In this document: in pieces, positions 1-13,360 of the stretch
How positions within the stretch are numbered: the first letter of the stretch is position 1
Layout: every line of letters begins with the position of its first letter
IMG/VR virus record: IMGVR_UViG_3300023184_000024
Location: 124,001 to 188,000 of that record
DNA length: 64,000 nucleotides
Reading direction: 5' to 3' (one strand)
The notes under the pieces: generated by a model
Told to the model about the DNA's origin: nothing
The model's database searches: none
The model's input: the letters and a program-made list of their open reading frames with translations, nothing else
Translations under genes and position numbers: made by a program

Positions 1-15
1 TTTAAGGAGAAGTGT

Positions 16-210
16 ATGAAGCACAAGATGATCGTGCCACAACGTAACCCCTTCGTTGTGTTGGCACTAAAACGCAAAGCGGGTAGTCATCGCAAGAGCA
101 ACAAAGCTCTGCGTCGATGCGAAAAATCTAGGGATCGTGGTGAAGCGGTATCACAGCAGACTTTTAATCTGCCAATCCCGAGTTCGAATCTCGGCGGTCC
201 CACCATATAA
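16..210 (+). CDS. small basic protein whose reading frame runs through tRNA-Lys
   Basis: AAGGAG at 4-9, 6 nt before ATG; Lys/Arg-rich first 38 codons; no stop until 208-210, after the tRNA CCA. Confidence 0.55.
   Translation: MKHKMIVPQRNPFVVLALKRKAGSHRKSNKALRRCEKSRDRGEAVSQQTFNLPIPSSNLGGPTI
131..205 (+). tRNA. tRNA-Lys(TTT)
   Basis: cloverleaf, GCAGA-CT TTT AA-TCTGC, TTCGAAT loop, CCA. Confidence 0.95.
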
Positions 211-271
211 AAACACATTGGTGTTGGTTTAACAAATAAGTAAACCTAGTTATAGTGTGTTTCTATATGGT
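202..271 (+). repeat. inverted-repeat stem, copy 1 of AAACACAYT/AGTGTGTTT element
   Basis: ACCATATA-A-AAACACATT pairs with AGTGTGTTT-C-TATATGGT. Confidence 0.7.
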
Positions 272-541: not shown

Positions 542-633
542 ACCTCGGTAGTTTAACGGTAAAACAGCGGATTTATATCCCGTGCGCAACAGATAATTGG
601 CCAATGTGGGTTCAACTCCCGCCCGAGGTACCA
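542..633 (+). tRNA. tRNA-Ile(TAT) with atypical 22-nt variable arm
   Basis: ACCTCGG/CCGAGGT acceptor, loop TT TAT AT, T arm GTGGG-TTCAACT-CCCGC, A73, CCA. Confidence 0.85.
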
Positions 634-3817: not shown

Positions 3818-4010
3818 GAACGTTCCGAGTGTCTTCGGATACTGTGACCCGCAGGATGAGAAGTAGTGTGACAACTACGGGTGGTAGTCTTCGAACCTAA
3901 AGGCCGCTGGCAATGCGAGAACTGTCCCTGTCGGGAAGCGGGTGGAAGGTACGTGTGAGGGGTATGATAGCGTCATATCTTTCTGTACTATAATTACCGC
4001 CGGGGGATGC
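3818..4010 (+). ncRNA. unidentified structured, probably pseudoknotted RNA, about 190 nt
   Basis: UUCG-capped hairpin, GTAGT/ACTAC hairpin, 3880-3888/3993-4001 stem, crossing ACCCGC/GCGGGT pairing. Confidence 0.65.
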
Positions 4011-4011
4011 A

Positions 4012-4084
4012 GAGCATATTGAAGCACATTGTGTGTCGGCTTGCTGATAAACTTTAAGTAGAGATAGTGTGTTTCAATATGCTT
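4012..4084 (+). repeat. inverted-repeat stem, copy 3 of AAACACAYT/AGTGTGTTT element
   Basis: GAGCATATTGAAGCACATT pairs with AGTGTGTTTCAATATGCTT. Confidence 0.7.
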
Positions 4085-4089
4085 TTTAT

Positions 4090-4167
4090 GCACAGGTGGC
4101 AGAGTGGTCCAATGCAACGGATTGCAAATCCGTAAAACCGTGAGTTCAAATCTCACCCTGTGTTCCA
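4090..4167 (+). tRNA. tRNA-Cys(GCA)
   Basis: ACGGA-TT GCA AA-TCCGT, U73, CCA. Confidence 0.95.
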
Positions 4168-12117: not shown

Positions 12118-12756
12118 TTGCCGGTACATTTAATCAATCCACTGCCGATATATCAAGAAGAGTCTGGCTATACTTTGTCAGACTCTGAATTATCGATACT
12201 CAACAATATCAAATATAACTCAGTGAGCAAGCCGTTTATCTGGGAATATGCATCAGAGTATACAATATTAGATCACCCTGGACTGGCAGATCTAAAGGCT
12301 GTATTACAACAGCACTTGGATAGGTATCGCAAAGAAATATGTGGTGTGGTTGATCAAGAGTTTTATATTACCAACAGTTGGTTAAGTAAAATCGAAGCTA
12401 TCCAAGGTAACTTATCTGAACATTCGCACGACAACAGTTTAATCAGTGGTGTGTTTTACATTGATGTCCCGCCCGACACTCCTTTGTGTTTTCGTAATCA
12501 TAGTCAGATTTTTAAAAAACATGATTTTTATTTTTCAAACAGTGTTGATACACAATACCGACAAGAAACATATTGTGTACCAGTAAAATCTGGAGACATT
12601 GTGCTATTCCCAAGTTGGGTAGATCATTACGTTGAAAAAAATCAAACAAGTCATGTTCGAAGAAGTTTGGCATTTGATAGTTTTGTTCGAGGGCTGTTTG
12701 ATGGTAAAATGTTGCACAACGATAAAACTGGTTTTAGTACGCTAATGATTAAATAA
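12118..12756 (+). CDS. putative 2OG-Fe(II) oxygenase (TIGR02466-like)
   Basis: HSH.NS.ISGVFY, GDIVLFPSWVDHYV, RRSLAF motifs. Confidence 0.8.
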   Translation: MPVHLINPLPIYQEESGYTLSDSELSILNNIKYNSVSKPFIWEYASEYTILDHPGLADLKAVLQQHLDRYRKEICGVVDQEFYITNSWLSKIEAIQGNLSEHSHDNSLISGVFYIDVPPDTPLCFRNHSQIFKKHDFYFSNSVDTQYRQETYCVPVKSGDIVLFPSWVDHYVEKNQTSHVRRSLAFDSFVRGLFDGKMLHNDKTGFSTLMIK

Positions 12757-12760
12757 AAGT

Positions 12761-13083
12761 TAAGACTGTATGAAGTAGAGAGAAAAGGATTCAAGACGCG
12801 GGGGCAGTGCCCGCCAGGTCCACCAAAAACACACTGCCAGTCGCGCTGGTTGTATGGTACTATTCTAGAAATAAGGTTCGAATCCTTAGTGTGTTTTTGA
12901 TGGGCCTGACACAGGATCGATTGGGTCAAGAGTATTGAAATGGACAGTCCGGCAATGTAGAAGCCGTTAGGGTTGGGGGAACTCGGCCGAAGACACAAAA
13001 ACCGTAAATGCAAACGACGAACAGTTCGCTTTAGCCGCCTAAACTCGGCTTAGGGTAGGAAATACCTCGTAACAGAAACCACC
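12761..13083 (+). ncRNA. ssrA: two-piece (circularly permuted) tmRNA
   Basis: acceptor piece ends ...GCGGG-GGCAGTG-CCCGC-CAGGTCC-ACCA (12825) before the coding piece starting GGGCCTG (12902); G3:U70; tag ANDEQFALAA* at 13010-13042; 5' end approximate. Confidence 0.92.
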
Positions 13084-13107
13084 AGCCCGCTTCGGCGGGC
13101 TTTTTTT
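13084..13107 (+). terminator. intrinsic terminator
   Basis: AGCCCGC-TTCG-GCGGGCT followed by a T run. Confidence 0.9.
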
Positions 13108-13120
13108 CTTGGAGTAAACT

Positions 13121-13360
13121 ATGGGCAATCAAACCGATTATTTTGAACGCATTGGCTACAAACCCACCTGGTATCTAGGAGATAGGGTGTTTGGGCATTG
13201 GAATAAAATTCCTTTTGTTGGAACAGTGGGCAATGATACTGTGATTAATCATACTGAAGGGCCACGGATCACTATTCATTTAGACCTTCCCATCAAGTAC
13301 AAGAGTCAAATACACAATATTATTGTAGTTAATCATAAAGATATCAAGCTTTACAAGTAA
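13121..13360 (+). CDS. hypothetical protein
   Basis: GGAG RBS, 79-aa ORF. Confidence 0.7.
   Translation: MGNQTDYFERIGYKPTWYLGDRVFGHWNKIPFVGTVGNDTVINHTEGPRITIHLDLPIKYKSQIHNIIVVNHKDIKLYK

What the first reader, a model, noticed from the sequence alone, without database searches (positions are those of the whole stretch)
4..271. Small basic ORF whose stop codon is removed by tRNA processing: ArfA-like nonstop-mRNA logic
A gene with a strong RBS encodes 38 Lys/Arg-rich residues (RNPF...KRKAGSHRKSNKALRR) and then runs without a stop into tRNA-Lys. The TAA lies beyond the CCA, inside the conserved stem. RNase P cleavage at 131 would give a nonstop mRNA whose product is tmRNA-tagged and degraded unless trans-translation is saturated. 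The rescue factors ArfA and BrfA (small, basic) are regulated through nonstop mRNAs in this way. With a phage tmRNA nearby, this may be a phage ribosome-rescue backup circuit (inference).
Basis: partly seen in the sequence, partly recalled or inferred. Interest (0 to 1): 0.7.

Follow-up and report, generated by a model that had tools for sequence, protein, structure and literature searches.

The report
Phage peptide gene ending inside tRNA-Lys
A giant freshwater phage carries a conserved, translated gene for a tiny basic peptide. Its stop codon lies beyond the start of a tRNA-Lys gene, so tRNA processing should leave the message without a stop. Only the backup ribosome-rescue factors ArfA and BrfA are known to be built this way, so this may be a new family of such factors in phages and Betaproteobacteria.

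Summary
In detail: AAGGAG (4-9), ATG (16), 38 codons with 12 Lys/Arg, then tRNA-Lys(UUU) at 131-205 with no stop before it. The first stop, TAA 208-210, lies in a hairpin after the tRNA.

The ORF is a real gene. Relatives occur on about 90 phage contigs and in 57 of 301 Burkholderiales genomes. Invariant residues carry free synonymous change, and Ser switches between TCN and AGY codons.

Of 66 distinct phage versions, 54 read straight into a tRNA (51 into tRNA-Lys). This happens in all three phases, with the stop at tRNA positions 4-126. Most of those that do not enter a tRNA hold an intrinsic terminator or a long hairpin before or around the stop. About 10 of 35 bacterial members have a terminator inside the ORF. 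Other ORFs in the same tRNA arrays enter a tRNA at about 1% of tRNAs.

So removal of the stop looks selected, as in arfA and brfA.

The peptide is not a detectable homologue of ArfA, BrfA, ArfT or ArfB. It belongs to no Pfam or NCBIfam family, and its members are annotated as hypothetical. Rescue activity and tmRNA tagging are untested inferences.

Verdict: a new family with ArfA/BrfA-like regulatory anatomy, in which a tRNA/RNase P site is a new way to make the nonstop message.

The parts
4..9 (+). Shine-Dalgarno AAGGAG, 6 nt before the ATG
   Evidence: Read directly. An AGGAG/AAGGA-type motif precedes the start in nearly all homologues. The sigma-70-type promoter TTGACC-17-TATAAT lies just outside the window, at L001 1466-1494.
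16..129 (+). Conserved small basic ORF: the 38 complete codons upstream of the tRNA 5' end, which is the predicted nonstop product. Core motif: RN-P-F-V..A..KRK-AGSHRKSNKA-LRR.
   Evidence: 26 protein homologues. 629 representatives at E<=1e-3. About 90 phage loci. Alignments A2/A3 show invariant N, G, H, R, K. Codon entropy at positions 1/2/3 is 0.77/0.71/1.35, with synonymous variation at the invariant residues.
130..210 (+). Continuation of the reading frame through tRNA-Lys to TAA 208-210. This 26-codon tail is not conserved as protein.
   Evidence: ORF list. In homologues the frame enters the tRNA in all three phases, and the stop falls anywhere from tRNA position 4 to 126. The tails look like translated tRNA, e.g. 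GIAQxVEQ and PLGV*.
131..205 (+). tRNA-Lys (anticodon UUU) with encoded CCA. Its 5' end (130/131) is the expected RNase P cut, which would leave the ORF without a stop.
   Evidence: ARAGORN. Rfam RF00005, 67.4 bits. Cloverleaf in the minimum-energy fold. The cleavage itself is inferred from general tRNA biology.
204..271 (+). Hairpin after the tRNA (arms 204-217 and 256-270). It holds the TAA stop and encloses a promoter-like TTAACA-16-TATAGT (229-256).
   Evidence: Fold: -25 kcal/mol, z -4.3. Motif search finds a second copy of the arm pair at 4015-4028/4068-4081. Promoter scan. Similar stems follow the tRNA in L084 and L132.
12708..13133 (+). Phage tmRNA gene, tag ANDEQFALAA. It is the likely tagger of the nonstop product; the host tmRNA could do the same.
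   Evidence: ARAGORN 12733-13133. Rfam beta_tmRNA 12708-13105 at 84 bits and permuted tmRNA at 111 bits. No SmpB, ArfA or RF-1/GGQ gene was found in the phage genome.

Best explanation
The ORF at 16-129 encodes a real, conserved basic peptide of about 38 residues. It is transcribed with tRNA-Lys from a sigma-70-type promoter.

Shown by comparison: the gene is built so that its stop codon lies beyond an RNA 3'-end-forming element. In this window that element is the tRNA-Lys 5' end. In relatives it is another tRNA, a long hairpin or an intrinsic terminator.

Inferred: RNase P cleavage at 130/131 releases a message that ends after codon 38 without a stop. Ribosomes stall at that end. tmRNA (phage or host) tags the peptide for degradation, so the untagged peptide builds up only when trans-translation is saturated or missing.

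Inferred from anatomy only: the peptide then acts as an ArfA/BrfA/ArfT-type alternative rescue factor. Its basic AGSHRKSNKA..RR tail would sit in the empty mRNA channel, and its hydrophobic RNPFVVLAL segment would recruit a host release factor to free stalled ribosomes during infection.

It belongs to a new family, unrelated in sequence to ArfA, BrfA and ArfT, shared by large freshwater phages and Burkholderiales bacteria.
For: (1) It is a translated gene. Strong SD and ATG are conserved. Purifying selection acts at the amino-acid level: the invariant Gly uses all 4 codons, the invariant Ser uses both TCN and AGY, and third-position entropy is about twice that of positions 1 and 2.

(2) The nonstop design is conserved. 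Of 66 distinct phage ORFs, 51 enter tRNA-Lys(UUU) and 3 enter other tRNAs (Ser, Arg, Met) with no earlier stop. There are 32-44 codons before the tRNA, always 12-16 residues after the invariant His. All three phases are used.

(3) Where no tRNA adjoins, another 3'-end element takes its place.
- L091/L092 have a 13-bp stem plus T10 terminator inside the ORF, about 50 nt before the stop.
- L164/167/172 have an 18-bp hairpin with the stop in its 3' arm.
- L143/155 have a stem of about 24 bp with the stop in its 3' arm.
- L148 and L140 have the stop in a hairpin loop.

(4) Bacterial homologues are found in 57 of 301 Burkholderiales genomes. About 10 of 35 carry a GC hairpin plus T-run inside the ORF, 12-102 nt before the stop. 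In Curvibacter L180 a hairpin with a 13-bp basal stem and further inner pairs ends at the stop.

(5) Control: other SD+ATG ORFs enter only about 1% of tRNAs in the same arrays.

(6) The only genes reported to be built this way are arfA (hairpin/RNase III or terminator) and brfA (terminator before the stop), both rescue factors repressed by trans-translation (PMC8012679).

(7) Anatomy matches. The peptide is small and has pI 11.9. The [RK]K-A-G-S-H-R-K motif with invariant G, H and K recalls KGKGS and KH in ArfA, KH in BrfA and KKGGSTNKK in ArfT.

(8) Context fits. It sits in a tRNA array with a phage tmRNA 12.6 kb away. A small GGQ (RF-1 domain) gene lies 1.6-2.8 kb downstream of the peptide in L087/L088 and in Thiobacillus denitrificans.

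(9) A niche exists. Canonical ArfA was found in 3 of the 301 Burkholderiales genomes searched and ArfB in 178. ArfB is weakly depleted in genomes that carry the family (OR 0.55, Fisher p 0.052, not corrected for phylogeny).
Against: There is no experimental or transcript evidence. Metatranscriptome contigs do not cover the ORF.

There is no detectable homology to ArfA, BrfA, ArfT/KGG or ArfB. The motif likeness is a resemblance only.

Many bacterial members have an ordinary stop. The Thiobacillus members overlap the start of nth; others have a terminator after the stop. Nonstop control is therefore not universal in the family.

About half of the family-positive genomes also have ArfB.

A leading ribosome coupled to transcription could run into the tRNA before RNase P acts and end at the in-tRNA stop.

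The near-exclusive link to tRNA-Lys, rather than to any tRNA, is not explained by the rescue model. It may be ancestry or a separate functional tie.

Two complete related phages have a tmRNA-like gene but lack the peptide.
Confidence: 0.5

Rival explanations
1. The peptide is real and its nonstop expression is selected, but it is not a release-factor-recruiting rescue factor. It could be another ribosome- or RNA-binding peptide whose level is tied to tmRNA activity. Or it could be tied to tRNA-Lys itself, for example as part of a counter-defence module against nucleases that cut the tRNA-Lys anticodon, delivered together with a replacement tRNA-Lys.
For: 51 of 54 tRNA-adjoining versions use tRNA-Lys(UUU) specifically, while the upstream neighbours vary widely (Arg, Ala, Ser, Gln, Ile, Met, Gly, Pro, His and others). 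There is no homology to any known rescue factor. The peptide is absent from two complete related phages that carry a tmRNA-like gene.
Against: The family persists without any tRNA nearby: L091/L092 and 29 of 30 bacterial chromosomal loci. It still keeps a terminator or hairpin before the stop in many of these. tRNA-Lys can be replaced by tRNA-Ser, Arg or Met. No defence or anti-defence genes were seen beside it.
Confidence: 0.25
2. The overlap has no regulatory role. The peptide is normally made by ribosomes that follow RNA polymerase into the unprocessed tRNA and stop at the first in-frame stop. The variable tail is tolerated, and the gene simply sits tightly packed in tRNA arrays.
For: Phage tRNA arrays are very compact, and spacers between the ORF and the flanking tRNAs are often only about 20 nt. 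The linker between the conserved core and the tRNA is only 3-8 codons, so lack of a stop there is not improbable for any single genome.
Against: 54 of 54 distinct tRNA-adjoining versions lack a stop, in all three phases and with unrelated tails. Other ORFs in the same arrays almost never do this. Terminators placed inside the ORF, in L091/L092 and about 10 bacterial members, cannot be read through by coupling, so those messages must be nonstop.
Confidence: 0.13
3. The ORF is a leader peptide. Its translation, which is rich in Lys codons, controls folding, processing or transcription of the downstream tRNA-Lys. The peptide itself has no function.
For: 7 of 38 codons are Lys (AAA/AAG), read by the tRNA-Lys(UUU) encoded immediately downstream. 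The physical coupling to tRNA-Lys is tight.
Against: Selection acts on specific non-Lys residues (N, P/F, A, G, S, H), with synonymous codon turnover. Homologues with the same core exist with no tRNA nearby, in phages and in bacteria.
Confidence: 0.05

Closest known systems
ArfA (E. coli YhdL; Pfam PF03889)
   Same: Small basic peptide. Its ORF contains a 3'-end-forming RNA element before the stop, so it is made from a nonstop mRNA and repressed by tmRNA (PMC8012679). The layout is also shared: a hydrophobic segment, then a Lys/Arg/Gly/Ser/His-rich tail (KGKGS..KH versus RKAGSHRK). The hairpin-type relatives (L164 and similar, Curvibacter L180) resemble arfA's hairpin.
   Different: No detectable sequence relation: the Pfam model is silent and hhalign gives 0.08%. 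The predicted product is shorter (32-44 aa versus 52-55). In the window the stop is removed by a tRNA 5' end (RNase P), not by RNase III or a terminator. It is encoded by a phage. The release-factor partner is unknown.
BrfA (B. subtilis YqkK)
   Same: A Rho-independent terminator lies inside the ORF before the stop. L091/L092 and about 10 Burkholderiales members (for example Leeia and Chitinimonas) show this arrangement. A His in a basic tail is conserved.
   Different: No sequence match: the PDB profile search at E<=10 found no chain. The lineages differ (Bacillus versus Betaproteobacteria and their phages). The window's own copy uses a tRNA, not a terminator.
ArfT (Francisella tularensis)
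   Same: About 40 residues. It has a basic C-terminal motif, KKGGSTNKK, to compare with KAGSHRKSNKA. Like ArfT, many bacterial members of the new family have an ordinary stop.
   Different: ArfT is not made from a nonstop mRNA. It was placed in the KGG-repeat-like family by Burroughs and Aravind, and no such Pfam match is seen here.
Excision of tRNAs that sets mRNA ends (mitochondrial tRNA punctuation; bacterial mRNA-tRNA co-transcripts such as E. coli secG-leuU; from my own knowledge, not checked here)
   Same: RNase P cleavage at a tRNA 5' end creates the 3' end of the upstream message.
   Different: In those cases the upstream ORF keeps or completes its stop. Here the stop is systematically left on the tRNA side of the cut.

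Membership tests
ArfA (PF03889) | Sequence match to the ArfA profile | tested here: not met
   hmmscan at E<=10 gives no hit for the window peptide or for 42 family members. A six-frame search of the whole phage genome with PF03889 gives no hit. hhalign of A2 against E. coli ArfA gives probability 0.08%. A language-model feature search put an ArfA cluster only at rank 29, score 0.82, which is a lead at best.
ArfA (PF03889) | ORF lacks a usable stop because a 3'-end-forming RNA element precedes it (nonstop mRNA) | tested here: met
   At the level of gene anatomy only. In the window, the tRNA-Lys 5' end lies 78 nt before the stop. The same holds in 54 of 54 tRNA-adjoining homologues, and most of the others have a hairpin or terminator. 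The actual RNA 3' ends were not observed.
ArfA (PF03889) | Product tagged by tmRNA and degraded; accumulates when trans-translation fails | not testable with these tools
   Needs Western or mass spectrometry in wild type versus delta-ssrA.
ArfA (PF03889) | Basic C-terminal tail with KGKGS and KH motifs that binds the empty mRNA channel | tested here: inconclusive
   The tail is basic, and G, H, R/K, K are invariant in RKAGSHRKSNKA. This is a resemblance to the published motifs, not an alignment.
ArfA (PF03889) | Recruits RF2 to hydrolyse peptidyl-tRNA on nonstop ribosomes | not testable with these tools
   One co-folding job (T. denitrificans RF2 with the peptide from the same genome) gave no verdict.
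BrfA | Rho-independent terminator inside the ORF before the stop | tested here: not met
   Not in the window's copy, which uses a tRNA. It is met in relatives: L091/L092 and about 10 bacterial loci.
BrfA | Sequence similarity to BrfA | tested here: not met
   The profile A2 finds nothing at E<=10 among all PDB chains. The PDB includes 6SZS, a ribosome structure containing BrfA (cited in PMC8012679).
ArfT / KGG-type | Match to the ArfT/KGG-repeat helix family; ordinary stop codon | tested here: not met
   No Pfam match of any kind. The window's gene has no stop before the tRNA.
ArfB (RF-1/GGQ domain) | GGQ peptidyl-tRNA hydrolase domain plus a basic tail | tested here: not met
   The peptide has 38 residues and no GGQ. 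PF00472 is not found anywhere in the phage genome.

The most novel reading that the evidence does not exclude
This is a previously unrecognised family of alternative ribosome-rescue factors, widespread in Burkholderiales and captured by their large phages. It is regulated through nonstop mRNAs made in at least three interchangeable ways. In phages the usual way is RNase P processing of a tRNA-Lys fused to the ORF. If so, it would be the first virus-encoded release-factor-dependent rescue factor and the first case of a tRNA 5' end used as a trans-translation-sensing switch.
Probability: 0.4. Interest if true: 0.9.

Novelty: new variant of a known kind. Interest (0 to 1): 0.8.

Why it matters
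Alternative rescue factors (ArfA, BrfA, ArfT) are tiny and unrelated to one another, and were found only by genetic screens. Reviews state that more probably exist but cannot be found by homology (PMC8012679).

Here a purely genomic signature picks out a candidate family: a conserved small basic ORF whose stop always lies beyond a tRNA, hairpin or terminator. The family is found in 57 of the 301 Burkholderiales genomes searched, where canonical ArfA is nearly absent and about 40% lack ArfB. It also occurs in many large freshwater phages.

If confirmed, three things follow:
- phages would be shown to carry their own tmRNA-gated backup for ribosome rescue;
- RNase P would join the ways of making a regulatory nonstop mRNA;
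- there would be a search rule for further rescue factors.

The claim can be tested directly with standard E. coli ssrA/arfA genetics and in vitro release assays.

Tried and rejected
- Pfam, NCBIfam, PHROGs and PDB sequence searches of the peptide and of family profiles found nothing.
- hhalign against E. coli ArfA found no relation.
- Synteny through the neighbouring phosphoesterase gene failed. Its 80 best relatives (80-93% identical) do not carry the ORF nearby, because the tRNA arrays are heavily rearranged.
The 64-residue alignment A1 worked.
- Megablast of the region against GenBank phages gave only tRNA matches to phiKZ-like phages.
- Co-folding of T. denitrificans RF2 (residues after the frameshift, L218:868-1911) with the 41-residue peptide from the same genome gave no answer: score 0.00, controls not run. 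This is not evidence either way. The reference RF2_THIDA was not held.
- Metatranscriptome contigs from four lake runs cover only tRNA-like parts from relatives. There is zero depth over positions 1-94, so nothing can be said about transcript ends.
- Co-occurrence with ArfA is uninformative, as only 3 genomes have it. Co-occurrence with ArfB shows weak depletion (OR 0.55, p 0.052), uncorrected for phylogeny. One of the 301 genomes in these tallies (G304) is flagged unpublished; it counts only as one family-negative, ArfB-negative genome.
- Protein-atlas feature search gave leads to DUF7230 (0.85) and to an ArfA cluster (0.82, rank 29). Pfam scans confirmed neither.
- I considered a bL34-like ribosomal protein because of a loose LKRK..SH resemblance recalled from memory. 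No Pfam hit, so it was dropped.

Full report
**1.

The window is bases 124,001-188,000 of a 352,754-bp IMG/VR phage record with direct terminal repeats. At its left edge the sequence reads AAGGAG (4-9), six bases, then ATG (16). An open frame of 64 codons follows, ending at TAA 208-210.

ARAGORN places tRNA-Lys(UUU) at 131-205 with an encoded CCA. Rfam scores it 67.4 bits. Thus 38 complete codons precede the tRNA 5' end: MKHKMIVPQRNPFVVLALKRKAGSHRKSNKALRRCEKS, with 12 K/R and pI 11.9. Codon 39 straddles the tRNA 5' end.

The TAA lies in the 5' arm of a hairpin at 204-271 (z -4.3).

Upstream in the same genome (locus L001), tRNA-Arg(ACG) is followed by TTGACC-17-TATAAT, which ends 7 nt before window position 1. 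The ORF and tRNA-Lys therefore have their own sigma-70-type promoter.

27 tRNA genes fill the first 9 kb. A tmRNA gene lies at 12.7-13.1 kb. The phage genome has no SmpB, ArfA or RF-1-domain gene.

**2. The ORF is a real, conserved gene**

A word-indexed protein search found 26 relatives of 39-75 residues. They share MKxKxxVxQRNPFVVLALKRKAGSHRKSNKALRR. Their tails diverge completely and look like translated tRNA, for example GIAQxVEQ and PLGV-stop. A profile search of 1.84 billion representatives found 629 proteins at E<=1e-3, with the match almost always at the N-terminus.

Back-translated motif scans fetched 80 phage loci. Exact look-ups added 9 more.

Across 64 distinct DNA versions, mean entropy at codon positions 1, 2 and 3 is 0.77, 0.71 and 1.35. 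The invariant Gly uses GGT/GGC/GGG/GGA (23/16/15/10). The invariant Ser uses TCG/AGT/AGC/TCA. The invariant His, Arg, Lys and Asn all vary synonymously. Selection therefore acts on the peptide, not on an RNA. An AGGAG-type SD precedes almost every start.

**3. The stop is systematically placed beyond an RNA 3'-end-forming element**

Among 66 distinct phage ORFs:
- 51 run into tRNA-Lys(UUU). One of these tRNAs was missed by ARAGORN but found by Rfam.
- One each runs into tRNA-Ser(UGA), tRNA-Arg(UCU) and tRNA-Met.
- None of these 54 has an in-frame stop before the tRNA.
- The tRNA starts after 32-44 codons, always 12-16 residues after the invariant His.
- The tRNA start falls in phase 0, 1 and 2 relative to the ORF in 10, 27 and 14 cases.
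- For the 51 tRNA-Lys cases the first stop lies at tRNA positions 6 to 126. In the tRNA-Ser case it lies at position 4.

The gene upstream of the ORF varies widely (tRNA-Arg, Ala, Ser, Gln, Ile, Met, Gly, Pro, His, Cys, Val, Trp). ORF plus tRNA-Lys therefore travels as a unit.

As a control, I checked 558 tRNAs in the window and the non-redundant loci. Only 54 are entered by an ATG+SD ORF with at least 30 upstream codons, and 48-49 of these are this family. The background is about 1%.

**4. The exceptions are the most telling**

- L091/L092 have no tRNA. A perfect intrinsic terminator (13-bp stem plus T10) lies inside the ORF, and the stop comes about 50 nt later. This is the brfA arrangement.
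- L164/L167/L172 have an 18-bp hairpin right after the conserved core (z -8.1), with TAA in its 3' arm. This is the E. coli arfA arrangement.
- L143/L155/L158 have a stem of about 24 bp enclosing about 80 nt, with the stop in the 3' arm (z -5.1).
- L148 and L140 have the stop in a hairpin loop.
- L127 is the only complete locus without a clear element.
- L096 and L100 are cut by contig ends.

Different devices thus occupy the same place.

**5. The family is also bacterial**

A scan of one genome per species found two kinds of hit:
- Phage-like tRNA arrays with the ORF reading into tRNA-Lys, in a Rhodoferax MAG, another MAG and Thiobacillus denitrificans DSM 12475.
- Chromosomal 50-residue genes in Thiobacillus and Hydrogenophilales, with a normal TGA overlapping the start of nth.

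The phage profile hit 37 of 301 Burkholderiales genomes. A mixed profile (A3) hit 57 of 301. The shared core is (K)PRNP-x-A-x-x-A-x-x-R-x-AG-x-H-x-K-x-x-K-x-x-R, with R, N, G, H, R invariant.

The bacterial loci are not next to tRNAs. About 10 of 35 have a GC-rich hairpin plus T-run inside the ORF, 12-102 nt before the stop. These include Leeia oryzae and three Chitinimonas species. Their tails read FPPFFF, the translated T-run. In Curvibacter sp. CHRR-16 a hairpin with a 13-bp basal stem and further inner pairs (z -5.0) ends exactly at the stop. Others have an ordinary stop with a terminator after it.

Every named member is annotated 'hypothetical protein'. No Pfam or NCBIfam model matches.

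**6. Comparison with what is known**

arfA contains a stem-loop that terminates transcription or is cut by RNase III. brfA contains a terminator before its stop. Both are therefore translated from nonstop mRNAs and held down by tmRNA (PMC8012679). ArfT has 40 residues and a KKGGSTNKK motif, but it is not nonstop-regulated.

ArfA, BrfA and ArfT are unrelated in sequence to one another. ArfA and BrfA share only a KH motif that binds the mRNA channel.

The present family shares the regulatory anatomy, the small size, and the layout of a hydrophobic segment followed by a basic tail with an invariant His. It does not share sequence. The Pfam ArfA model is silent on the peptide, on 42 family members and on the whole phage genome. 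hhalign against E. coli ArfA gives 0.08%. The family profile finds no PDB chain at E<=10. It should not be filed as ArfA, BrfA, ArfT or ArfB.

**7. Mechanism: what is shown and what is inferred**

Shown:
- It is a translated, conserved peptide gene.
- The stop is conserved beyond a tRNA, hairpin or terminator.
- It is co-located with tRNA arrays and, in this phage, with a tmRNA.

Inferred from general knowledge of tRNA maturation: RNase P cuts at 130/131 and leaves a message that ends after codon 38.

Inferred by analogy with arfA and brfA: ribosomes stall at that end, and tmRNA tags the product for degradation. Untagged peptide appears only when trans-translation is overloaded, which is plausible late in infection by a 350-kb phage that degrades host mRNA.

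Inferred from anatomy only: the peptide then recruits a release factor to nonstop ribosomes.

**8. Supporting hints that are weak**

- A 124-residue GGQ (RF-1 domain) gene lies 1.6 kb downstream of the peptide in L087/L088. Another lies about 2.8 kb downstream on the same T. denitrificans scaffold.
- The phage tmRNA matches the betaproteobacterial model. This fits a Burkholderiales host, the group that carries the chromosomal homologues.
- Canonical ArfA was found in only 3 of 301 Burkholderiales genomes and ArfB in 178. A published survey likewise found arfA in 37 and arfB in 709 of 1,000 Betaproteobacteria (PMC11633108).
- ArfB is somewhat less frequent in genomes with the family: 27 of 57 versus 151 of 244 (OR 0.55, Fisher p 0.052). 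This is not corrected for phylogeny. One of the 301 genomes (G304) is flagged unpublished and contributes only to these counts.

**9. What argues against, or remains open**

- No transcript or protein data exist. Lake metatranscriptome contigs do not cover the ORF.
- The co-folding test gave no verdict.
- Many bacterial members have ordinary stops, and half of the carriers also have ArfB.
- Two complete related phages have a tmRNA-like gene but no peptide.
- The near-exclusive use of tRNA-Lys is unexplained. It may be common ancestry, or it may point to a tie with tRNA-Lys itself.
- A ribosome coupled to RNA polymerase might enter the tRNA before it is processed.

**10. Literature**

Full-text searches for phage-encoded rescue factors, and for nonstop mRNAs made by RNase P, found nothing relevant. 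Within the reach of that library the family and the device appear undescribed.

**11. Verdict**

The rescue function is plausible but unproven.

My estimates:
- about 0.97 that this is a real peptide gene;
- about 0.8 that the nonstop arrangement is a selected feature;
- about 0.45-0.5 that the peptide is an alternative ribosome-rescue factor.

Noticed in passing
window 204-271 and 3997-4099; also L084 1698-1790, L132 ~1700-1760: A recurring hairpin follows some tRNAs. Its arms resemble CATATAAAAACACA / TGTGTTTCTATATG, and the loop holds a sigma-70-like promoter (TTAACA-16-TATAGT at 229-256). Relatives L164/L167/L172/L135/L173 likewise have TTGACA-18-TATAAT inside a long hairpin. It could be a combined processing site and promoter, or an operator.
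   Followed up: partly
L087 2240-2614, L088 1998-2372; L220 ~1495-1773 (T. denitrificans DSM 12475, same scaffold as L178): Small proteins with an RF-1/GGQ domain (124 aa in the phage contigs; ArfB-like but short) lie 1.6-2.8 kb downstream of the peptide-tRNA-Lys unit. None is present in the window's own genome.
   Followed up: partly
L178 (T. denitrificans DSM 12475 scaffold, 14 tRNAs in 5 kb); L175, L176 (MAG contigs): Phage-like tRNA arrays carrying the peptide-tRNA-Lys unit sit in bacterial assemblies. They may be prophages, islands or mis-binned phage contigs, and they hint at Thiobacillus and Rhodoferax as hosts.
   Followed up: no
L143 1600-1720, L155 1604-1726: The stem of about 24 bp that holds the stop encloses about 80 nt ending in a T-arm-like GGTTCGAAACTATT. 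This may be a degenerate or permuted tRNA remnant.
   Followed up: no
window 12708-13133: The phage tmRNA scores higher on Rfam's permuted-tmRNA model (111 bits) than on beta_tmRNA (84 bits, exactly at threshold). ARAGORN marks it 'tmRNA*'. Whether it is a two-piece (permuted) tmRNA was not resolved. The phage has no SmpB gene.
   Followed up: partly
window 542-633; L148 1636-1736: Unusually long tRNAs: tRNA-Ile(UAU) of 92 nt in the window, and a 101-nt tRNA with an ambiguous 4-base anticodon call in L148. They may contain introns or long variable arms.
   Followed up: no
L001 780-1010 and 1198-1390 (genome 123,280-123,890, just upstream of the window): Two further consensus sigma-70 promoters (TTGACA-17-TATAAT at L001 799-827; TTGACA-18-TACACT at 1200-1229) drive short regions without obvious genes. 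The first ends in a strong terminator (974-1007), so it may encode a small RNA.
   Followed up: no
L177, L179, L181, L182 (Thiobacillus/Hydrogenophilales): The chromosomal 50-residue homologue sits between a large upstream gene and nth (endonuclease III), and its TGA overlaps the nth ATG. This conserved position suggests co-translation with nth in that lineage.
   Followed up: no
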